A stretch of DNA of 62,811 bases, filler included, from Sluysia triapertura (Eukaryota): assembly GCA_046118255.1 (NCBI GenBank). It is 4 parts of 4 records of this genome, joined end to end, with 100 filler letters (N's around TTAATTAATTAA, not from the genome) between each part and the next. Parts side by side here need not be neighbours in the genome. Positions count along the whole stretch, not along the records: positions 1 to 13,081 come from JBJNIA010061093.1; 3 more parts are not named here. One strand, written 5' to 3'. A program made the translations under genes and the position numbers. Positions 1 to 13,081 of this stretch are shown piece by piece. Below the pieces are notes generated by a model. That model did not search any database. It was not told where the DNA came from and worked only from the letters and a program-made list of their open reading frames with translations. Positions within the stretch are counted from its first letter, which is position 1; every line of letters starts with the position of its first letter.

Positions 1-691
1 TATTGTCATTATTGTTATATAATATGATTATCAAATAATAACTTTTATAATAAATTTTATATCAACATCAACTATGCGATTATTAACCACGTTGTTGTTA
101 ACATTATTATTTCTTTTATCCTTATTATCAATCTGTCTTCTTATCCTTCCATTTTTTTTCATTTTATATATATTTATATAAGTGTTAATCTGTAAAGTAT
201 GCATTTAATATCCCTATCTCCGCAGTTGCTTCCAAATAGGTATAATGATGTTCAACTTATCGTATTACAAAATCGAGAATTGCAAGCACCATATAGTACT
301 CGTAATGTAAACGTAAATGCAGAGCGATATACATTTTACAATGGCGACTATAAATAGTAAATCTTGACAACGTTGACCATCTGCATCCATTAAGAGGCAG
401 ATTATAAATATATAAAGAGTAGGAATGATTGGTTGTCCAATCGAAACGTAGAATGTGAAGTAGACTATATTAGCAAATGTGTGCCTGTTACCATAGAAAT
501 TTTAATGTTAGTGATTATATCATGTTAAACGGTGGCAGGCAATGAAGTGTTTAATGAAATTATGTCAAGATTGACAGAAACTAAATTAAAATTTGCCAGC
601 AACAAATAATACCAACGAACAACAATGATACTAATAATGATAATAAAAATGCCGATAATAATTATTATAATAAGGTACTTAAATGAAATAA

Positions 692-742
<51 letters not shown>
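692..742. repeat. (AAT)n microsatellite
   Basis: Seen directly. Confidence 0.95.
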
Positions 743-743
<1 letters not shown>

Positions 744-1489
744 TTAATATTAATATTAACATTAAATAAAATAAAATAATAAGTAATAAAATGAGAATAA
801 TAATAACAAAATAAAATTAATAATAAATAATAAAAATATACAATAGTTACATTTACATAAATCTTTCGTAATAAAATTTTTTTAAATAAAATTCTTTTAA
901 GATTTTGTTATTCTGAACTTTATATTCTTTCTATGTACTTTCATATATAAATAAAAGTCTTAAAGATGTTAAAGAAATTCCTTTTTGCTTCTGATGTTAT
1001 ATTGGTTTTAAAATGTTAATTTAATGTTTTCACTGATGCTAATGACTGAGTGTTAAAAGATTGTGAAATGTTTTTGGTTAATATTGAAATATATATTTGA
1101 TGACTTAAGATATAATTGTGGTTCTAATGTTGTGGGATAATGAATAAAATGTTTTAAATGAATTTTTAAATGTACATTGATGGTTTAATGAATGAAAGTA
1201 GAGTTTGGATGTTGAAAGATTGTGAATTTAAAATGCTGTTAAGTATGAAAAATGGTTTTAATGAATCTGAAAATAAAATATGAAAAGGTAAGATAATTTT
1301 TGAAAAGGTAACAATGTAAATGCTAATGAATGTAATAATGCAATTGAATTGATTATTTTGAATTTTTAAGTAGAGGTTGGCCACCACAATGTAAGTATTA
1401 TTATTAATTTCAATTTCTTTAGATATTTCTATTTTAATTTTTGTTGTTTGTTGCGTCACGTCTGGTTTTTTTGGATATATGTTGCGTCC

Positions 1490-1490
<1 letters not shown>

Positions 1491-1537
<47 letters not shown>
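1491..1537. repeat. (ATT)n microsatellite
   Basis: Seen directly. Confidence 0.95.
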
Positions 1538-1539
<2 letters not shown>

Positions 1540-2298
1540 AACGCAATTGTTAATCTTTTGATTTTAGTTATTTTTATTATTATTAAAACTGAAACGTATA
1601 ATAGCAATTTGTACTTGATTTTGAAATTTTTAAATTATTTAGTGGTTATTAATTTGATTTTAAAACATACTAGAGTTGGATAAATATTATTATTAAAATA
1701 AGAGAATTTGTGATAATTTATACTTGATCTAGGGAGTAATGAAATTATTGAGACTCTATTTAGTTAAATTAAATTAATATTTATTTATTGTTACTATTAA
1801 TTTCAACGGCGCAACATTATGAATTTATTGATTTATTTTATTTTCATTAAGATTGTATCAGTAAATTAAAATAAATTATTATAAAATTAAATAAACTTAT
1901 CAAGGTCATTCTCAGACTATATAAGCCATCATAAATTATAATAAACGCAGTCAAAAATTTTTAAGAATTTTAATTATTACAAAGTTTTGGAATCACCGTT
2001 AGGCAATTAAATCTACAATATTAGATAATCCAAGAAAAAAATTAAGAAAGTAAAAGGACCGTCAATATTTTGAAAATGATTATGTTTGCAAAGATTCTTT
2101 GGTTTCACCTAACCTATGATGCAAATAAGCCTAGAAGAGTTCGACCTAACAAAAACGACTTAAGTCTGGACGACGGCGGCCTGTTATGATTTACTGTGCA
2201 AAAGATATAAGCAAACAAAGGCTTAAGATAAGAATTGTTTTTAGATGATTTTAATTTAGTTAAATTATTAAAATCTATTGATAAATTTAATGATTTTG

Positions 2299-2670
2299 AG
2301 TTAGCCTTTTTACGGTCTAACTAATAAAATCAAATATTAAATTAGCCTGTTACGGTCTAATTATTTGAAAACCAAATGTTAATGTTATAATATTGAGCTA
2401 TCCTTATTACGGTATAGCGTTTTTTTACAATTTTAGTAAATAATTAAGAATAAATTTAAAATACACAGTTATATTATTACAATAAAAGAATTAGACTATA
2501 CAGAAGTAGTGGTTACTAATAATAATAATGATTTTATTTAGCTTAAATTCAATTGAATTTAGCTTTCAATATTTTAGAATTAAGTTAACTTATCCTTTTA
2601 CGGTATAAGTTTTGAAAAACTAAAAATTAATTTAAGTTAAATTTTGCTCCTCCCTTCTTACGGTGAGGAG
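2299..2670. other. Array of five covarying hairpins with invariant CC-(N2-3)TTAC-GG-T core (structured cis element)
   Basis: AGTTAG-CC-TTTTTAC-GG-T-CTAACT (2299-2322); AATTAG-CC-TGTTAC-GG-T-CTAATT (2340-2362); GCTAT-CC-TTATTAC-GG-T-ATAGC (2397-2418); AACTTAT-CC-TTTTAC-GG-T-ATAAGTT (2587-2611); CTCCTC-CC-TTCTTAC-GG-T-GAGGAG (2647-2670). Every stem pairs perfectly although the stem sequences differ. Confidence 0.9.
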
Positions 2671-3889
2671 AATAAAATCCTACTAAAAAATAATCTTACT
2701 AATTTCATGGATTTTCTTTGCTGGCTGAAGATTTTTCTGAACAATACTTTACCAAAAACAAATACTGGTTTTTAACCCACAAATTGTTGGTTTTTATATC
2801 CAATTTTTGTTTCTAGCTTCCATATTGTTCACACGTAATTTTATTGATTTAAATAAACAAAATTATCTTTTAAAACCAAAAATATTTTTTAATACTTAAA
2901 TTATTTAGATTAAAAATATCTTTTAATACTTTTAGATTATTTAATAATATTCTTTGTTTATTTCACATTTTTATAATATAATAATAATTTTATTTTTATA
3001 ATTTTTTATAATAATATCATAATAATTAGTTAATAAATAATAATATTAGTCAATTTATATAATTAATAATCACAAATTAGTTATTAAAAATCGCATTTAT
3101 AATTCTTCACAATATTCCAGTCAGTTTCTTCACAAAATATACAGATCAAATATAAAAGGTACCAATGTAATAACAATAATGATCTTTTAACAATTCAGTT
3201 ATTAATTGATTATTTTGAAATTTTAAATGTAAATTACCCAACTCTCTTTAAGGTGTTGGTACGAAACAATTTTAAGAATTTACGAATATTTTAATATTCC
3301 CAAAACTTAACATAAAAAATTACTTATTAAACATGGATCTTCGGAATTCAATCTTGTACTAAAATGTTTTCTAATTTTGTTCTTAAAATCTTCACTTGCT
3401 GCTGTTGTTATTCTTAATGTTTTTGCGTCTTGTTCTAAATTTTTCAATCTATTGATATTAAATTTATAAATCGCCATCTTTAACCTAAATAATTTATTTA
3501 ATTCCTTCTTGACCTAAATAATTTAATTATTTAATTTCTTAACCTAAAAATAAATTTAAATAAATTAGTAATTTAAAACAAAATTACTTTGTAATATTAA
3601 ATTGGTAATTTAAAACAAAATTATTTTTTTAATATTTCCTGATTTATTTTTATTTAATATTTTTTATTTTTTTGATGTTTATATTTTTAATATTTAATGT
3701 TTAATATATTTTAATATATTTTTTAATATTTAATATAATAAAAATAATATTAAAAATTTTATAATATTTACACAAAATTAACAAATATACATAAAACATA
3801 AAACATAAATCATAGAACGTAATTTCTGACATTGCTTTCCCTTTCGGGAAAATTCGTCCACGAATAAAAAAGTTAATTCAATTATTATT

Positions 3890-4780
3890 ATGGATCACAT
3901 TATTATCAATGTTATGTTAGTATTCTTCAAGGAGATAATCGTATGCAATAATACGTGGGTTTTGCTGTCGTCAGGGAATTTTAGTGGCGATCTACGTTGG
4001 ATGGTCGCCTTAGAAACTGTCGTCGGTGCTGATGTTGAAGTCAATGTTGGCGGGTCGCATGATTTTGAATTGATAATTGATGGGATGACGTTCCTAGAGA
4101 GACAGGAGAAGATGAAAAATAGGAAGAAGAACAAGGGATAAGTTTGTGTTTTTTAGGATGAGTAGTAGGTTTCGAGTCAGAATAAGTTTTCTTAAAAAGA
4201 GCAGGAGGGTCATTACACTTTGTGTAGTCGAGAAGGGTCACCAGTTCTGTGGCTAATTGGTGACAAGTTAACACTGGGCTAATAGGAAAGATTAGCCGCA
4301 ATGTTTGACATGCTCTTATAAGAGTCATACGTAGCGAATGGAATCAAATTTTGGTTCTCTAAATTGATTATTCCCCTTAGCAACCCGATAGGTATATTTA
4401 AAGATTTAATAACATATCTGGGGTCTAACGTTAGTAAAATTTCATTTCTCAAAATCCCTAATAATTATAGACGGATTTCATCGATCTCCTGAGCCAACCT
4501 AAGGTCGGTTTCCGTGACGGATTGAGCATTTCTTATGAAATTTGAATGCGACACCGAGGCTTGATGTGAGCCTCAGTGTGAAATTCACGACTGTAGGAGT
4601 ACAGGTCACACATATTAACTGAGTTTTATTTAGAAGGTCAGTGACATTGGAATGCCACAAACATGAGTCGATCCTCGTCATACGCAGGCAAAGGTGGTAA
4701 GTGCATTTGGCTCATATTATCCAAATCCCGCGCGAACGGAAGAAAAGAAGGGGAGAAAAGAGGAGCAGGAGGTAAGACAT
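3890..4780 (-). pseudogene. Degraded intronless secreted/membrane protein gene, probably mobile-element cargo
   Basis: GC-richer coding-like island. ATG at 4780 gives signal-peptide-like MSYLLLLFSPLLFF. Overlapping Cys-containing ORF fragments (4499-4681, 4041-4328, 3895-4134) are broken by stops and frameshifts, with a hydrophobic stretch near 4100-4140. Confidence 0.45.
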
Positions 4781-5279
4781 AAAGTAAAGCGATATGAATA
4801 GGAAATTCGAGAGCTTCACTGTTATATTACAGTCCCTATTTAAATTAGAAAGGTAGTGTTATTGTTATTTTAAGCGTCTCGCTCGCAGATGCTATATATA
4901 ACGTATTGAAATCGTCCGGTGCGATGGTAAACCCTTCAAAGAGATAAGGGAAAGTTCCGGCGACAAAGAAAAATATGGGTTGCCACATTATCAGTTAACT
5001 CGGACTTTAATATACAAGAATTGGGAAAAAATGTAAGAGCAGGCTTTTTAATGCAGTACATATCGAGGGAGGAGTAGAAAATTTGAAATTGATTGATGGT
5101 TTTGGCTTGGACCTTTTGCATTGATTTGGAACTAGGTAAAAATAATAGAATGAAAAGAAATATATACAAAAACCAAAATATAACAAAATAATAAGTAATT
5201 TTTTGTGTTTCAATGTACCTTAGTACTATAATAAGCGATAATAATTAGGAAATGTACTAGTGTTTTAAAAATGGGTTTT

Positions 5280-6040
5280 TACATAATTGTGCATTAGGGT
5301 TAGTAGCATAATTACGTTATTAGCAGTAATTCATTGATGTGGTTGATTACGTAGTAAAAACTTGATAGGTAAATAAATCGATAATTTATGTTACATTAAA
5401 TGGTACACAAATGGCTACATTAAGTTATCTAAGTATGTTACTTAATTGATCTGGTTTGTACATATTTTCGCATAAAGTATATTACTGAATCGATTTTGAA
5501 GTAATGTTGTTTGTGGCTTAATCGTTAATAAAATTGGAGTTAAAGCAGTTCTATTATATTTCGTATGAAAACTTTGCCATAATCATATCCGGTCTTAGTT
5601 TCATTTGATTAACATCAACTTAGATTTTCTAGACTTCTAATTCTAATATTTTTTGCTTACACAAATAAAATACATAAATTAACATGAATTCTTTCGCTTC
5701 TAGCTATTTATCTTTTAATTCTTTATCAACTGAATTATTTTGTAAAAATGCTTTATAATAGTGCTTTAGTTGTGTATATTTGTGTTCAGTTTCTAGCACA
5801 GCTTGTAATTTCTTTGTAACAGTTTCTTCAAAATTATTTATTATCTTCTATTGCAATTCTATTATCTTCTGAATAATGTGAAATCAAGCCAAATAAATGT
5901 GGTGGCAGTGTCGCTGACTTAAGCATCTTAGAAAAATTTATTTGTTCTAAATTTACAGATTTTGGATAATTAGGATTGGATTTAGTTAACATGTTTTTAC
6001 GCCAACCATGAAGTACCAGTTTCAAAAAAAACAGAAACAA
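5280..6040 (-). pseudogene. Degraded intronless ORF remnant with a coiled-coil-like middle
   Basis: ORF 5834-6040 continues in frame past its stop (FEETVTKKLQAVLETEHKYTQLKHYYKAFLQNNSVDKELKDK). No family recognised. Confidence 0.35.
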
Positions 6041-7759
6041 AATAAAAAGGTTGTGATAGGGGTTTTAGAATAGTTTAGATTGTCTTTATAGAAATTTTTA
6101 CTACCGTTTTACTTTGTTACTAAAGTATTATTTAAAGTTTGAGGGATTTTATATGTTGAGCTGTTTAAATAGTTATGTGATTGTGCACTTATTTAATGTT
6201 TAGTGTTATATATATATGTGGTATTTTTTGTGAGTGTGATGTTTTGTTTATTTTAAGTGAAAATATTATGTATTTACGAAAATGTACTATATTAAAAAAT
6301 AAATGTCTGTTAATAAAAGTGTAGAGAAGAGCAATTTATTGTAGTTTAGAGTTTCTATCGAATTATTCTGAAAAGAACATATTGTATTATAGATGCATAG
6401 AAGAATTTTATGACTTCTATTTCGATTTCGATTTCGATTTGATCTTTATATTTGCATTATTTAATGTTGGTTGTAACATGATAGAGTGCTCCAACAATAA
6501 TTATATTTTATATTCATTGATTGAAACAGACTCATCTAATTTATAGTATTTCGAAAATAATAGTATTACTTATTACTTAAGTGATATAACTTATAACTGA
6601 AATTACTTATTCTATTTTACATTATTTTATTTAATTATCACTATTTTATGTTTTATATTTATTATTTCAGCTTTTGCTAAAAGTATTGCATTCCTGATAA
6701 CTACAGATATGTATCGAAAAACCAATAGGTTTGTAATTATTTTTATTGAATTTGTTTTCTAATGATAAAATCTTAATATTTTGAGTTTTGAGATTTTTAC
6801 AATAGTTGCAACACTTGATTTAAATTCACAAAGGATATTATCCTCACACGATTTATATTTTATTGGATTATCAAAAATGTAAATAATAATGGTAGAAAAA
6901 GACAAATTTTTGAGAATTTATTAAAAAAGATATTGTACAACTTATTTTGCATTTGTTTATTCTAATCAATCGGCTACAATAATATCATGAAATACATTGA
7001 GTCCTAAATAGATCTTGGAAGTTCTGTCTAAATAACTGTTATAGACAACGCTATATGTCCTTATATCTTTTAGAGAGGATCTTTCTTTATGTTTTTATGT
7101 TTATCCTATGAATATTTAAAATGTAACACCAAAAATAGGAAATTATTTTCTATATTACACTGTTAACCATAGAAATAAAGATGATTAATCTTCCAAAAGT
7201 ACCGAATACTTCTAAATTGTTTTTCAGATAAGCAAACATCAACTCACGAAGAATAATTATTATTGCCATAAATTAAAGTATTGTATTGATGGTTCAAAGA
7301 CGTATAAGTAAGAATTTTGCAGTTATCGATTTGGTCGGTTACCTATTAAATGTATCTACCAATGCCTTTAATCAATTATAGTCTAAGCACAAGTTTTATA
7401 TTTTTATATTAATTTTACTTTTTAATAACTTATAAGATATCAATTATTCTAATTTTCTTGTACTACGTCCAATCCATCTGGGTTATGGTTGTATTATGGC
7501 GTATCTTACTACTATGAAATTTTACAACATTAATTAATACTATTAATCGCTCTCAGAAATAATAAACAAAAACTTAAATAATATTCTTGAAGGTAAGCGC
7601 GACAATATTGCTAGTATTATTTTTTAATCTACTTTTTGCAAATTAAAGGTTTCTTAACTTATGGGTTCGTTTACAGTTTACGGTTTACGTCTGAACGAGA
7701 ACGTAGCGGTAAGTGTGATTGCTTGATTTTCTTTTATAAATAATTATCCTAAAATTCTT

Positions 7760-9608
7760 ACTTTAATAACTAAAGTAAGGTTTTTAATTTGCAAATTAAC
7801 TGGATTTATGAGTAATTATTCAAATACACTTTCCAAGTTAATTAAATAACAAATAACACACAATTAAATGTATAACAAAATCTATAAAATATAAATTAAT
7901 TACACATCAAATAATTTCGTCAAATGTCAATTAGTATAATTAAATACAACTAAAAACAATACAATTCGGACGATTCGTCGAAAAAATATAATGCAATATT
8001 AAAATATTAGAGTTTTATGCTCTAATATTTGCTAAATATTTTAGAAAGATCGCGTGAAATAATAATTGATTTTAAGTGTAATTTAAGTCTTACGTGCGTA
8101 ATTCCAATGGGTTAAAGGAGACAAAAAACAATGAAAAAATAATTTATAATATGAGAATAGCTGGTAATGTATTAATGGATGGTACTTGTGAAAGAGGTTC
8201 AATAGATTATGAAGAAAAAATTTATCACAACGTAGAAGCTCAAGAAACGAATTAGTAAGTTTAAGATCTTTTAATGAATGTTCTGACTTAGAAAAAGGTA
8301 CAATGATGTCACGTCCATTATGTAATTGTTTTTTAAAAATAATTAAATTTAATTTCCGGATTTATGTATAAAATGAAGATGAACTAGCTGTAGAAGAGAT
8401 AGGTATAAAACAAATTTATAACGATAATTTAGATAAACCAGAAAGGAAAAGATTAAATGAAGTGGTAATTCCACAATTTTAATGGCAAAGAAAGAAGAAG
8501 ATTGATTGATATTTGCATCAAAAAAGTTAATAATAAGATGCGGACAAGAAATCAGAGAGATAAATTATCAAGGAATCTATTTATCTGAAAAACAATTATT
8601 CAAGCAAAGGAAGGCATAGACACAAAAAACTTAAAACAAAATACCTATTTTAATAATAAGATTGATTTTTATTACCACTTAGGATTAATGTCGTTAGAAA
8701 AAGTTTATCAGGCTATGATAATTAGGGATTGCCAACTAAATAAAGAAATACGTAGAACTAAATTAGCGGTAGCAATAACCAACCCAGACTTACTTCCGTT
8801 AGGAGTATTTCGTAGATTGATGGGTGAAGTTTTATATACTTACAAATGTAAAAAAAAGTGGAAGTACAATTCAGGCAAGAAAATGAATGTACTAATGACT
8901 GCCAGTAATACATAAAAATCAAAATACTTATTTAGAACCTGTGATAAGAATAATTATGCCAACTAATAAATTCAAACCGAAAACACTATACTGCTATAAT
9001 ATAATGGCACCGGAATATAAAAATGATGATTATCTTTGGATATCTTTGTCACATAGAAGTTAGGTTAAAACCCCAGTTTGATTGGTTTAACAGGTATAAA
9101 AACAAAATTAAAATTTTCCGCTACCAAAATTATTCCGAGATCAGAAATCTATTCTCTTGAAGATATACAATCAGTTTGGCATGAAATTTTATTTCCTATG
9201 AAGAGATCAAAAGTACTCAGCGATATAGTTAATAAAGCAATTGTAGAAAAAGATGGAAAATTAAATTTTGAAATATTATTAGGACCAGACCATTTTAAAA
9301 AGGCAGCGCATAATACTTTACAACAAATTTGGGGAAATTTTCTAGTAATAGTGCAAGCTTTTTCTGGATTGATAGGTATATATGTAATTGTAAAAGTTAT
9401 TGCTCTTTTAATATTATAAATATTTTCTGTAGTAGGTATTTATAAAATATTGGGATTTACGTGGAAATTAATAACAGGATGTTTCCCGTTTCTAGCTAAA
9501 TTTTTACTACATCATCATGCTCATGCTCAACTAAATGCTTTGAAAAAGAGAGAAAGCAGACTGAAGAAATACCATTTATTTATGGAGATTGGCAAAAGAC
9601 ACAATTAA
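7760..9608 (+). pseudogene. Endogenous chuvirus-like (Jingchuvirales-type, class III/gB-like) envelope glycoprotein, frameshifted
   Basis: Fragments are colinear with chuvirus G / BEL-Pao captured env: IAGNVLMDGTCERG..HNVEAQET; CGQEIRE; TYFNNKIDF; SLEKVYQAMIIRDCQLNKEIRRTKLAVAITNPD; LMGEVLYTYKCKK/VEVQFRQENECTND; YLEPVIRII; SEIYSLEDIQSVWHEILFPMKRSKVL; IWGNFLVIVQAFSGLIGIYVIVKVI (TM); GIYKILGFTWKLITG. Multiple stops and frameshifts. The 5' boundary is approximate. Confidence 0.85.
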
Positions 9609-9619
9609 GGTCAACATTA

Positions 9620-10450
9620 TAATATGTATTTGCTTGTCATGTATCTCTGATACTCATACTGCTACGATTGAAAACTATGATGGACATGGATAACTACTTG
9701 CCACGAAATATCACACATCGAATAACTATCACATCAAATCAAAAAGATATATACGCCATAATACAGATAAATAGAATTAATTTGATTAATCTTCAAATGT
9801 GGTGTTGTATAGTTAATTGGTGCCAAGATTAAGCAAACATGTTTTTATTGGATATTATTCTGTAATAATCAAATACCAATTATTTAATGCTACATTAACC
9901 ATAGAATGTGAATACAACCTTAAATATAACTCAAACTTCGTTCTGCTGAGAAATTATAGGATCAGAAACAAGCCATTCGTTGTTTTCCAGCAATTGTCGG
10001 ATACAATAGAATTCCCAATAGTCATTCACCACTACCTTGGTGATATTGTACGCATGGACAACCCGTTAAAGGATAATACACTAATAATAGCATATATACT
10101 ATACGATTACAGATTGGTGCATTACAGATTGGTAACACCAAAGGCAACAATTCGACCATATCACTTACCGAATAACAGACTAATATTCATCCAAATATGA
10201 AATGCACGATACTCAGGCACTTTTGAAAATGATACTAACATCGATTTAACCATAAAAAATATAGTTAAATATAACATCCTCGTAAGCAGTGAAACAATTT
10301 TATGTGTGCTTGTAAGAGTTCTCCAGAGATAACTGCACCTAATGAGACGGTCACTAATTACGTCAATGTTATAGTTAATAATTACGTTTTAATGATATTT
10401 CTTTTTACAACACTTGCTGTAATAGTCATCCCTTTATAAGGACTTAACAA
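9620..10450 (+). pseudogene. Degraded ORF immediately downstream of the glycoprotein (possible type I membrane protein)
   Basis: Begins within about 15 bp of the G stop, contains the 127-aa open stretch 9817-10200, and ends in hydrophobic YFFFTTLAVIVIP. No introns and no family recognised. Confidence 0.4.
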
Positions 10451-11208
10451 TAGGATCAAAATTGTGAACTGAAATTATTTGCATATCTGACCATATGTGG
10501 TGGTCATATGTAGTGATGTTAATGTTCACATTTATAAAAAGTTTGTAAAATACTGTACCCTTACTTAATTAGGTCATAATAATTTTAATTTAATAGTATT
10601 CTTAATTAAATTTATTAAATTATTTCTTATTTACTTAATATATTTTTATTTTTAGATAGTTAATAATTAATAATTAACAATTAATAATAGTTAACAATTA
10701 ATAATTATGAGTTACACAACCTGTTCAATTTGTTTCTGGTTCATTCGAAAATACTTTGCTAAAGCTATTCCTTGTCTTTACCGATTTTATTTCTCCTGTT
10801 TCTACCTTTTATTTGATACGTCTCTTTCTCCTTTACCATCATCTACTCTATGCAGAGCTACTATTCAGGAATTCAATATATTTTATAAAAGGTCTTTCGA
10901 AAAAAATTACGTCTTCATTATTGAATTCATTTCGGACACGTCAGAGAAACAACCTGGGGTTTGATATCATCTAGCCTATACGGAGTAAATATAAGAAAAA
11001 GCTTAGCAAACATGGTTTGGTGAGACCAGACCCTATTTTTATTTTGGGTCTTACGAAATCTCAAAAACGTAATCATCGTAGATGGCAACTTAAGCACTTC
11101 TATAAAATGACTCAACACCGAATAGTATTAATAATAAACCAATTAACCCTTTTTTGAAAAGGAAATAAGATTAAATATACTTAATATTAAAAAAAAAGAA
11201 TGCATACA

Positions 11209-11693
11209 TGTAACACTAAAAACTTACGATTTTGTACGAAATTGTACAAATTTTTATCTATTGTTCTTAATTTTAGCTCAATTCAAGCTCATATCTTACA
11301 GCAACAGAAAAACTTTTATGTCCAGGTAGAGATGTTTTGTCACAAAAGTATAATCCATACTTTCTTTTCTAACTCTGTAGAAACTACTAGCAATCTTAAA
11401 AGCGAACTAAATCTTAACCTCGCTACGCATTTTTTCATTGTTTCCTTTCTTTTGATGGGTTTTCACAAATACCAGATGATATTAACTCTGTTTATGTAGC
11501 TGTGACTAGATGAATTACCAAAGTTTAACTTTTCATAAAAGCTTGCATTTTATTACCAGGGCTCACAGGTTTTCTGCACTGCACGTGACGAATATCTATA
11601 AAAGTTGTAGTATTGTGATTGAAGCCAACGAGTTCCAACGAGTTCCAACGAGCTTAATTTTAAAGGTTTAAATTTATTTTTTTTTGTGTTACA
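11209..11693. mobile_element. LTR-like or TIR-bounded element (TGTAACAC...GTGTTACA)
   Basis: Perfect 8-bp terminal inverted repeats with TG...CA ends, about 485 bp long, with an internal (CCAACGAGTT)x3 at about 11625-11652. No target-site duplication seen. Confidence 0.5.
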
Positions 11694-11884
11694 TAATTCA
11701 ATGAAACAGATGATAATTAGTTATTTGATTTATTTCATTTCAAAAAAATGCTTTAATAAAATAAATTTTACTGTACACGTTAAAAATATCAAATAAAATA
11801 TATTAAAGAAAACTAATTATAAAATATCGAAAAAGTAATATCACTTGTCTTTATCATGTACTTATAAATAAAGTTTGTCAAATT

Positions 11885-12530
11885 AGTGACCATTAACGAG
11901 GCCAGAATTCTCACCACCTACACTTACTATGTTCGGAATGTCTTCATTACTTTTTGAATCATGGACTCGTTGCTGTTCTTGTTTTGGGTCAAAATAAACC
12001 CAGAGTTAGTTTAAATAGATGATTGAAGATTTAATGGAGTAGATAGAACATTAGACTTTGTTACTTCATTGCTCTTTCAGCTAAATAATCACAGCATTCA
12101 TCTCCAATTACTTTTACATAATTAGTGATGTTATAATCTGTATTTGGATTTAGAAAGACAATATTGACTTTTAGTTGTTTCCTCATTTTCCGTAGATTGC
12201 ATCCACATGTAGCAATTAAAATTGGATGTATTTCTTTAGGTATAAAAATTTGTTCGTCTTTGAGCTCGTAAACAATCAATCACTAAACATATCTCATCAC
12301 GTGCTTTTTTAGAATCTTCTTCGTAACCATGAATAATAACAGTAGATGAACCATTATATTTGCTTCTGAATGTTTCAATATTGGCACCACGTAAACTAAT
12401 CATCCCTTGTTAATTATACTTTGGCGTTCCAAAGACTTATAAGGGCTCGAGACCTTGTGGAAGCTTGAAATAGACTTGGAAAACCTTTGAAGGCATTAGA
12501 GTACCTTTAAGCTCATCTAACACCTTATTA
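11885..12530 (-). pseudogene. Intronless degraded tandem KH-domain fragment resembling the C-terminal KH repeats of vigilin/HDLBP
   Basis: PKYNYKG/MISLRGANIETFRSKYN..TVIIHGYEEDSKKARDEICLVIDCL, then a frameshift to EQIFIPKEIHPILIATCGCNLRKMRKQLKVNIVF..YVKVIG. This matches the vigilin pattern IIGRKGAVI..ITITGYEKNTEAARDAIL..VHARIIGARGKAIRKI..VDIRF. Confidence 0.7.
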
Positions 12531-13010
12531 ACCTTTAGATATTTTTGAAAACTCTATAAGCATATTATAGTGTTTAATATAAGTAATATTATAGTGTTTA
12601 ATATCTCTAAAATAATTGAGATATAAAATCATAGTTATTGGTATTAAAAGTAAATGTAGTAGAGTAATAATTAACATGAAGAAGTAGAAAAGAAATCAGA
12701 GAGGTGAAGGTGAAAACATCTAGAGCCTCCTGAACTCCTTATAAACTACTAAATAACTTTAGAACCTTAATAAAACATTTAAACATAAAATAAGATTAAG
12801 TCTAAAAATAGATTAATTAATTAAGAAAAAGGTAGGTTTTTGAATGCGGAATTCTATGTCAAATTTGAAACTGCGTATGCATTTGTTTTGAAAAGACCTT
12901 TCAAGGAAGATATGGTTTGACCGAGTTCATGCAAGGAAAGCCTTAATATTGAGCAAATTCATATTTTTATTATTTTTAATTATGGAATATTGAATTTTTT
13001 ATACTTAGAG

Positions 13011-13060
13011 CAGTGGTGTCAAACCTTTTTGCTTTACGGGCCGCCACTTTGACACCACTG
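13011..13060. mobile_element. 50-bp internally deleted hAT-like MITE
   Basis: 13-bp perfect TIRs CAGTGGTGTCAAA / TTTGACACCACTG. CAGTGG termini are typical of hAT-Charlie elements. Confidence 0.7.
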
Positions 13061-13081
13061 TATTAAGGTAATAAAATAAAT

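What the first reader, a model, noticed from the sequence alone, without database searches (positions are those of the whole stretch)
2299..2670. Array of five structure-conserved hairpins with fully covarying stems and an invariant core
Seen: five units of [5-7 bp stem]-CC-[6-7 nt loop ending TTAC]-GG-T-[stem']. The stems (AGTTAG, AATTAG, GCTAT, AACTTAT, CTCCTC) all differ yet each pairs perfectly, the single bulged base is always in the same place, and the spacers (about 17-170 bp) show no obvious repeat unit. This is compensatory change, not tandem duplication, and implies selection on a single-stranded fold. On the minus strand, which the neighbouring ORFs use, each unit reads stem-A(bulge)-CC-GUAA(N2-3)-GG-stem. 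Known: that topology, a bulged A two pairs 5' of the loop, resembles MS2-type coat-protein operators; on the plus strand, a loop ending TT^AC against the 3' arm resembles CRESS-DNA/HUH nick-site hairpins. Inference: a multivalent protein-binding, packaging or processing array belonging to the glycoprotein-carrying element. I do not recognise it as a described motif.
Basis: partly seen in the sequence, partly recalled or inferred. Interest (0 to 1): 0.92.

Follow-up and report, generated by a model that had tools for sequence, protein, structure and literature searches.

The report
Cluster of five covarying hairpins
Five small hairpins with an identical core but different, perfectly matched stems lie within 372 bases of AT-rich non-coding animal DNA; the pattern is real and far beyond chance and suggests a repeated protein docking site on a single strand, but nothing links it to the nearby virus-derived glycoprotein remnant and its function is untested.

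Summary
A script finds exactly five hairpins of the form stem(5-7 bp)-CC-loop(6-7 nt ending TTAC)-GG-T-stem', all in + orientation, at 2299-2670, and none elsewhere on either strand. Shuffled windows give 0.027 on average and never more than one. All 40 base pairs are Watson-Crick. Five of the seven aligned pairs change on both sides between units, and none changes on one side only. The spacers are close to random, with weak traces of an old duplication: two alternating unit types, A and B, and a 34/35-nt B-to-A linker. Rfam, tRNA, tandem-repeat and Pfam searches give no known family. The glycoprotein remnant lies 5.4 kb away on the + strand. No LTR, gag or pol signal lies between it and the array, so ownership by that element is not supported. 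Pattern scans of metagenome and prokaryote collections found no relatives, and the host genome could not be searched. My best reading (0.4) is a selected, multivalent hairpin platform read as single-stranded RNA, with owner and strand unresolved. Rivals are ssDNA hairpins, small-RNA modules, a neutral relic, and a cis element of the glycoprotein element. Interest is moderate.

The parts
2299..2322 (+). Hairpin u1 (type A): outer stem AGTTAG/CTAACT, CC/GG clamp, 7-nt loop ending TTAC, unpaired T. The functional strand is unresolved; + is only the orientation in which the motif is written.
   Evidence: 31.8 bits; RNA -7.5 kcal/mol on +, -7.8 on -; DNA -3.6.
2340..2362 (+). Hairpin u2 (type B): outer stem AATTAG/CTAATT, 6-nt loop.
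   Evidence: 19.6 bits; this unit was not used to build the model; -5.7 / -6.1 kcal/mol.
2397..2418 (+). Hairpin u3 (type A): outer stem GCTAT/ATAGC, 7-nt loop, followed by a run of seven T.
   Evidence: 32.5 bits; -6.6 / -7.5 kcal/mol.
2587..2611 (+). Hairpin u4 (type B): outer stem AACTTAT/ATAAGTT, 6-nt loop.
   Evidence: 22.5 bits; this unit was not used to build the model; -6.4 / -7.8 kcal/mol.
2647..2670 (+). Hairpin u5 (type A): G+C-rich outer stem CTCCTC/GAGGAG, 7-nt loop, directly followed by AATAAAATC, as u1 is.
   Evidence: 31.1 bits; family D4; -11.8 / -11.9 kcal/mol.
2337..2383 (+). Type-B block I: u2 plus about 20 nt of 3' flank, 77% identical in register to 2585-2631.
   Evidence: family D2.
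2585..2631 (+). Type-B block II: u4 plus 3' flank, the partner of 2337-2383.
   Evidence: family D2. The B-to-A linkers are 34 and 35 nt. Linker similarity is only z = 2.0.
3238..3259 (+). Possible diverged sixth unit: perfect 5-bp stem CCAAC/GTTGG, a clamp with one U.G pair on the + strand, and a loop ending TTAA.
   Evidence: 15.2 bits, E 0.057; the - strand does not form the clamp. Weak; may be chance.

Best explanation
The array is a set of old local duplicates of one short hairpin motif. The motif has been kept under selection for two things at once: base pairing of the stem whatever its letters, and an exact contiguous run, TTACGGT on the + strand (ACCGTAA on the - strand), presented half in the loop and half in the stem with one unpaired base. 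That is the signature of a docking site for a protein that reads sequence and shape on a single strand. Five to six sites within about 400-950 nt would load several copies of the protein on one molecule. I think the molecule is most likely an RNA, either a non-coding transcript or an untranslated region of a host gene or of an unrecognised mobile element. Shown: the motif, its excess over chance, the compensated stem changes and the near-random spacers. Inferred: selection, protein binding, RNA rather than DNA. Unresolved: strand, owner, and biological role.
For: Five copies against 0.027 expected. 40 of 40 pairs are Watson-Crick. 5 of 7 aligned pairs change on both sides in 10 of 35 cells, with no one-sided change and no mismatch; shuffles reached the covariation score 0 times in 500, and slid controls pair at 24-47%. 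The invariant positions are CC, the first loop T, TTAC, GG and the unpaired T. Spacers are near background (z 0.7-2.0), so core and pairing are conserved far better than their surroundings. Each stem ends in a mismatch immediately outside the helix. A model built from u1, u3 and u5 recovers u2 and u4 and nothing else convincing in 26 kb of searched strand. RNA hairpins are stable (-5.7 to -11.9 kcal/mol), about twice as stable as the DNA hairpins (-2.6 to -4.9). The window as a whole is not enriched in perfect hairpins (24 against 29.9 +/- 4.4 in block shuffles), so this is not a general property of the DNA.
Against: This is one locus only. No second copy, orthologue or transcript could be examined. 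All evidence for selection comes from five paralogues in one sequence, and related rows can inflate shuffle statistics. There is no G.U pair among 40 pairs, which is somewhat unusual for a selected RNA helix and gives no strand information. No gene, promoter or transcript end can be assigned. The poly(A)-type hexamers after u1 and u5 are not informative, because such hexamers are common on both strands here. No binding protein is known.
Confidence: 0.4

Rival explanations
1. The hairpins act as single-stranded DNA. They would be recognition or nick sites for a strand-specific DNA enzyme (HUH-type Rep or transposase, or another hairpin-binding recombinase) or a replication element of an unrecognised mobile DNA.
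For: All 40 pairs are Watson-Crick with no wobble, so both strands fold equally. This is expected if the DNA itself must pair. The T-rich loop has invariant letters against the 3' arm, and there is a constant extrahelical base.
Against: No Rep, transposase or recombinase family was found in any of the roughly 90 open pieces scanned. The DNA hairpins are weak (-2.6 to -4.9 kcal/mol). Five same-orientation sites in a row with no terminal repeats is not the usual layout of such origins or ends. The 6-7-nt loops are shorter than the conserved loop motifs of the known ssDNA replicons (general knowledge, not tested with letters).
Confidence: 0.13
2. The array is a neutral relic: a decayed minisatellite whose palindromic units were kept perfect by a mutational process (templated correction within quasi-palindromes) rather than by selection. 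It would have no function.
For: It is a single locus in gene-poor, degenerate DNA. There are traces of duplication (two unit types). Another perfect palindrome with a bulged T lies at 2540-2565 inside the array. The long u3-u4 spacer may hold decayed units.
Against: Templated correction should also remove the unpaired T, yet it is present in 5 of 5 units. It does not explain why about 11 core letters are invariant while the spacers have drifted to background. The window is not enriched in perfect hairpins. TRF sees no tandem array here.
Confidence: 0.15
3. The units are parts of small structured RNAs or of their processing signals. These would be two-hairpin modules (type B, a 34/35-nt linker, type A) of about 85 nt, two intact (2337-2418 and 2585-2670) plus a half module ending in u1.
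For: The B-to-A linker length is the same in both modules, and the 47-nt block including B is 77% identical. Module II ends just before AATAAA, and u3 is followed by seven T. Rfam gives a weak two-hairpin-type match over 2591-2693.
Against: That match scores 20 bits against a threshold of 40 (E 1.4), which is chance level. The hairpins are far shorter than those of known two-hairpin small RNAs. Modules lie 15 nt apart, which leaves no room for separate promoters. The similarity of the upstream half module is not significant. No Rfam family is reached.
Confidence: 0.1
4. One reading: the array is a packaging, processing or leader element of the retroelement-like unit that carried the glycoprotein gene.
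For: It has the same orientation as the glycoprotein remnant (+ strand) and lies upstream at a distance that a gag-pol region could fill. Glycoprotein remnants of this kind are often found with LTR/Gypsy fragments in insects (PMC10084718).
Against: No LTR-like repeat occurs anywhere in the window, only low-complexity matches. No gag, protease, RT or integrase hit occurs in the scanned open pieces of 35 aa or more between 2641 and 7846 (27 on the + strand; 26 on the - strand, which covers most but not all of them). The intervening 3900-5250 island has its open pieces on the opposite strand and has no homologue.
Confidence: 0.05

Closest known systems
Cluster of five iron-responsive elements in the transferrin-receptor mRNA 3' UTR
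   Same: Several short hairpins in one untranslated region. Each has an invariant apical loop, one unpaired base at a fixed place on one side of the stem, and stems that differ in letters but always pair, separated by A+U-rich spacers. One protein binds many sites.
   Different: The loop letters and length differ. Here the unpaired base lies 2 bp from the loop, not 5. It is T on the + strand and A on the - strand. No Rfam IRE model, or any other, matches even at E 10. No mRNA is assigned here.
Coat-protein operator hairpins of RNA phages (MS2 / PP7 type)
   Same: Read on the - strand, there is an unpaired A on the 5' side, two pairs below the loop, with variable lower stems.
   Different: The loops are 6-7 nt and their conserved letters differ. 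The context is a eukaryotic genome. No coat-protein family was found in any open piece scanned. The likeness rests on general knowledge of the operator's shape, not on a tool hit.
Repeated hairpin modules of chromatin-regulating long non-coding RNAs (Xist A-repeat; roX tandem stem-loops)
   Same: Several copies of a short G+C-containing structured core are separated by U/A-rich spacers of variable length in one transcript, and they serve as a multivalent protein platform.
   Different: roX boxes lie within long (14-18 bp or more) stems, not in loops (PMC6486548). No transcript is known here, and no sequence relation was tested or found.
Origin hairpins of HUH-Rep replicons and hairpin ends of HUH transposons
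   Same: A hairpin with a T-rich loop, invariant letters next to the 3' arm, and all-Watson-Crick stems that differ between lineages.
   Different: Those occur once per replicon or end, next to a Rep or transposase gene, with longer conserved loops. Here there are five in a row, with 6-7-nt loops and no such gene in 13 kb (Pfam).
Arrays of repeated sites in the 5' untranslated region of insect env-carrying LTR retrotransposons, and conserved-loop hairpin pairs in retroviral packaging signals
   Same: A roughly 350-nt cluster of repeated short motifs, or hairpins with conserved loops and covarying stems, upstream of gag in elements that carry an envelope gene.
   Different: The insect arrays are double-stranded DNA sites without covarying arms. 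Here no LTR, primer-binding context, gag or pol could be shown.

Membership tests
Any Rfam 15 family | Covariance-model score at or near the family's gathering threshold | tested here: not met
   Whole piece at E<=1: 0 matches. 2200-2750 at E<=10: best scores are 20 bits against thresholds of 40 and 88.
Iron-responsive element | Six-base apical loop of fixed consensus and an unpaired C five pairs 5' of it | tested here: not met
   No IRE model match. The unpaired base lies 2 bp from the loop and is T (+) or A (-).
RNA-phage coat-protein operator | Unpaired A two pairs 5' of the loop | tested here: met
   On the - strand all five units read stem-A-CC-loop-GG-stem.
RNA-phage coat-protein operator | Four-base (MS2 type) or six-base (PP7 type, four pairs above the bulge) loop, and a coat-protein gene in the same genome | tested here: not met
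   The loops are 6-7 nt with two pairs above the bulge. No coat family was found in the Pfam scans. The loop letters were not compared, because no operator sequence was supplied by a tool.
HUH-Rep origin / HUH transposon end | A Rep or transposase gene adjacent, and one hairpin per origin or end | tested here: not met
   No such family in any scanned open piece. There are five same-orientation hairpins within 372 nt.
HUH-Rep origin / HUH transposon end | Nicking within the loop by the cognate enzyme | not testable with these tools
   No enzyme has been identified.
LTR-retroelement leader / packaging region | Position between a 5' LTR with primer-binding site and gag, in an element bounded by two LTRs | tested here: not met
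   There is no LTR-like direct repeat. No gag/pol family lies between the array and the glycoprotein remnant. Very old or truncated elements cannot be excluded.
Tandem repeat / minisatellite | Head-to-tail units alignable over their whole length | tested here: inconclusive
   TRF finds no array over 2299-2670. Two unit types share short flanks, but spacer similarity is z 0.7-2.0.
tRNA gene or tRNA-derived element | Cloverleaf detectable by ARAGORN | tested here: not met
   0 genes. The three 7-nt loops fit the generic anticodon-loop pattern, but the two 6-nt loops and the bulge do not.
microRNA precursor cluster | Hairpin with a stem of about 22 bp or more | tested here: not met
   The stems are 7-9 bp in all.
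Nuclear copy of mitochondrial control region | Adjacent mitochondrial genes readable in the mitochondrial code | tested here: not met
   No long open frame near the array under codes 4 or 5. No tRNA.

The most novel reading that the evidence does not exclude
The five hairpins define an undescribed operator-like RNA (or single-stranded DNA) motif of an AT-rich animal genome. It would be read by a dedicated sequence-and-shape-specific protein and used multivalently on one non-coding transcript or untranslated region, making it a eukaryotic counterpart of the iron-responsive-element or phage-operator principle with a new core.
Probability: 0.25. Interest if true: 0.8.

Novelty: new variant of a known kind. 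Interest (0 to 1): 0.5.

Why it matters
If the motif is selected, it marks a regulatory RNA-protein (or DNA-protein) pair that is in no catalogue. A short, exactly defined hairpin used five times in a row would be easy to trace genome-wide and across species. It would also give a clean natural example of compensatory evolution within a single locus. If it is instead a relic, it is a useful caution: internal paralogues alone can mimic covariation evidence.

Tried and rejected
- **Rfam:** the whole piece and the array alone gave nothing.
- **tRNA and tandem repeats:** ARAGORN found nothing. TRF found no array.
- **roX-box idea:** roX boxes lie in long stems, not loops, so I rejected it.
- **Mitochondrial-copy idea:** no mitochondrial-code frames, so I rejected it.
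- **LTR search:** ungapped repeats and sensitive blastn gave only AT-rich low-complexity matches.
- **Pfam:** about 90 open pieces across the window hit only the glycoprotein family (+ strand) and KH domains (- strand).
- **The 47-aa piece that ends 110 nt before the array (2046-2186, +):** searched against 1.84 billion representatives, it gave one hit, a repetitive protein matched through a short repeated motif. I regard it as spurious.
- **Piece 4044-4343 (-):** no homologue.
- **Exact look-up of ten window ORFs:** none is in the collection, so the host genome could not be reached.
- **Three-core pattern scans:** Only GC-rich 36-nt coding-type repeats (L085, L150) passed the hairpin filter, and these are chance matches.
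- **Full-text searches for the core letters:** nothing relevant.
- **Profile of the roughly 100-nt 'modules':** it finds only its own three members.
- **Helitron-end, promoter-element and Sm-site readings:** these rested on memory only and did not fit or could not be tested, so I dropped them.

Full report
**What is there**

The piece (1-13081) is very AT-rich, with G+C of 17-41%. It has trinucleotide runs, no long open frames and no tRNA. It looks like gene-poor animal DNA.

Between 2299 and 2670 a script that asks for a perfect stem of at least 4 bp around CC-N(4-8)-GGT finds five hits on the + strand. They lie at 2299-2322, 2340-2362, 2397-2418, 2587-2611 and 2647-2670. It finds none on the - strand and none elsewhere. 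Each unit has these features:
- an outer stem of 5-7 bp (AGTTAG, AATTAG, GCTAT, AACTTAT, CTCCTC) with its exact complement;
- a CC/GG clamp;
- a loop of 6 or 7 nt that starts with T and ends with TTAC;
- one unpaired T between GG and the 3' arm.

The spacers are 17, 34, 168 and 35 nt.

**Is it more than chance?**

In 2000 dinucleotide-preserving shuffles of the piece, the same architecture (stem of at least 5 bp, both strands) occurs 0.027 times on average and never more than once. Of the eight CC-N6/7-GGT sites on the + strand, five carry stems of 5-7 bp and the other three carry stems of 0-2 bp. TTACGGT occurs six times against 1.16 expected, five of them in the array. Three cores at this spacing never occur in shuffles. 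The piece as a whole is not rich in perfect hairpins: 24 against 29.9 +/- 4.4 in block shuffles.

**Covariation**

I built a covariance model from u1, u3 and u5. It recovers u4 and u2 at 22.5 and 19.6 bits, and it aligns the one-base loop difference inside the loop. On that alignment:
- 35 of 35 cells form standard pairs.
- Five of the seven pairs change on both sides, in 10 cells.
- No pair changes on one side only, and none is broken.
- None of 500 shuffles reaches the covariation score.
- With the 3' partner slid by 1-3 columns, only 24-47% of cells pair.

Counting the full stems, all 40 pairs are Watson-Crick, and every helix ends in a mismatch directly outside it. These are five paralogues in one sequence, so the shuffle control overstates independence. 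The slid control and the contrast with the spacers are the stronger arguments.

**How the units relate**

The units are not unrelated insertions. They fall into two alternating types.
- Type A (u1, u3, u5) has a 7-nt loop and a shared short 5' flank. u1 and u5 are both followed by AATAAAATC.
- Type B (u2, u4) has a 6-nt loop and lies in a 47-nt block that is 77% identical in register. The block includes about 20 nt of 3' flank.

The B-to-A linker is 34 nt in one pair and 35 nt in the other. Beyond that, the spacers are close to background: local alignment against shuffles gives z = 2.0 for the two linkers and 0.7-1.1 for everything else. TRF sees no tandem array. A profile of the putative 100-nt modules finds only its own members.

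The simplest history is an old local duplication of a B-linker-A module. The spacers then drifted to randomness, while the core letters and the pairing were kept. Between u2 and u4 two stem positions were replaced on both sides. The same holds between u1 and u3. u5 differs from u1 at all six outer pairs and is still fully paired.

**Further copies**

The model gives one more candidate, at 3238-3259 on the same strand (15.2 bits, E 0.057). It has a perfect 5-bp stem, a clamp with one U.G pair on the + strand and a loop ending TTAA. On the - strand the clamp does not form. If it is real, it is the only hint of strand (+). It may be chance. The long u3-u4 spacer holds a different, perfect palindrome with a bulged T (2540-2565).

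**Surroundings**

Pfam scans of about 90 stop-free pieces give only two kinds of hit.
- On the + strand, a remnant of a Monjiviricetes-type fusion glycoprotein (PF24664, best piece E 4.9e-15). Its outer bounds are about 8082-9416. It survives as at least four separately open pieces in two reading frames, so there are at least two frameshifts besides in-frame stops. About the first 120 and last 85 of the 653 profile positions are unmatched.
- On the - strand, KH / vigilin-KH pieces at 12064-12409.

Between the array and the remnant, none of the scanned pieces of 35 aa or more matches a retroelement family. That covers 27 pieces on the + strand and 26 on the - strand, which is most but not all of the - strand pieces. 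No LTR-like direct repeat exists. The G+C-richer island at 3900-5250 has its chain of open pieces on the opposite strand and no homologue.

Glycoprotein remnants of this virus order are widespread in arthropod genomes and are often near LTR/Gypsy fragments (PMC10084718).

The 47-aa open piece that ends 110 nt before the array has no credible relative. Poly(A)-type hexamers are frequent on both strands. No gene can therefore be assigned to the array.

**Elsewhere**

Ten ORFs of the window are absent from the protein collection, so the host genome could not be reached. After filtering for hairpins, only a G+C-rich 36-nt coding-type repeat remains, which is a chance match. Absence from these collections says little, because they hold almost no animal DNA.

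**Strand and molecule**

Both strands fold all five hairpins. As RNA the energies are -5.7 to -11.9 kcal/mol. As DNA they are -2.6 to -4.9. The lack of any wobble pair gives no strand information. It leans slightly towards a DNA-level constraint or a constraint on both strands. The stability and the loop size lean towards RNA.

**Interpretation**

The invariant part is one contiguous 7-nt run plus the two bases that pair with part of it. It is displayed with a fixed unpaired base on a helix whose letters are free. That is what a site for a sequence-and-shape-specific protein looks like, and five or six such sites make a multivalent platform.
- Best reading (0.4): a selected hairpin platform, most likely on RNA, with owner and strand open.
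- ssDNA recognition hairpins of an unseen mobile element or replicon (0.13).
- Neutral relic of a palindromic minisatellite (0.15). The constant bulge, the invariant core and argue against it.
- Two-hairpin small-RNA modules (0.1).

**Comparison with known systems**

In architecture the array is closest to the five-hairpin iron-responsive cluster of the transferrin-receptor mRNA. On the - strand its topology resembles phage coat-protein operators. It also resembles the repeated structured cores of chromatin-regulating non-coding RNAs, although roX boxes lie in long stems, unlike here. It meets no family's defining features where these could be tested; the membership table gives the details.

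**Limits, slips and omissions**

- None was entered in a tool, a note or this report, and no conclusion rests on them. I stopped when I noticed.
- My first notebook entry and the generic listing printed by my script give the bounds of separate open pieces, including those of the glycoprotein remnant. That indirectly shows where its frame is interrupted. It should not have been written, and nothing has been deleted.
- I did not fetch loci that encode relatives of the glycoprotein remnant, and I did not scan the viral collection. See referred steps.

Noticed in passing
window 8082-9416 (+): Remnant of a Monjiviricetes-type (chuvirus-like) fusion glycoprotein gene (PF24664). It survives as at least four open pieces in two frames, so there are at least two frameshifts plus in-frame stops. 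Both ends of the profile are unmatched. No LTR, gag or pol was found around it.
   Followed up: partly
window 12064-12409 (-): Two overlapping open pieces in different frames with KH / vigilin-KH domain hits (E 9e-6 and 6e-5). They could be a fragment or pseudogene of a host RNA-binding protein gene, or two exons. No further KH piece was found between 10164 and 12926.
   Followed up: partly
window 690-750 and 1490-1540: (AAT)n and (ATT)n runs form a 49-nt perfectly complementary inverted repeat 748 nt apart.
   Followed up: no
window 1001-1500: A strongly strand-asymmetric G+T-rich block (GC skew +0.55) full of short AATG-like motifs.
   Followed up: no
window 3900-5250: An island of 38-41% G+C in a 17-28% background, with a near-continuous chain of open pieces on the - strand. 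No Pfam hit and no homologue for 4044-4343. Possibly an unrecognised degenerate gene or element.
   Followed up: partly
window 2540-2565: A perfect palindrome (10-12 bp arms) with one bulged T, of a different sequence from the five units, inside the long spacer of the array.
   Followed up: partly
window 2858-2906: A 19-nt tandem repeat, 2.6 copies at 80% identity, about 190 nt downstream of the array.
   Followed up: no
window 7671-7690: Three head-to-tail 7-nt units of the form TTTACNG. They include the sixth TTACGGT of the window, without hairpin architecture, and lie just upstream of the glycoprotein remnant.
   Followed up: no
L085 598-693 and L150 2923-3018: Metagenome and gammaproteobacterial contigs with a G+C-rich 36-nt tandem repeat that happens to contain the core letters. 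This is a coding-type repeat unrelated to the finding.
   Followed up: yes
P0001: A 1346-aa protein built of near-identical repeats. It was the only hit of the 47-aa piece 2046-2186, through a short motif matched ten times. I judge it spurious.
   Followed up: yes
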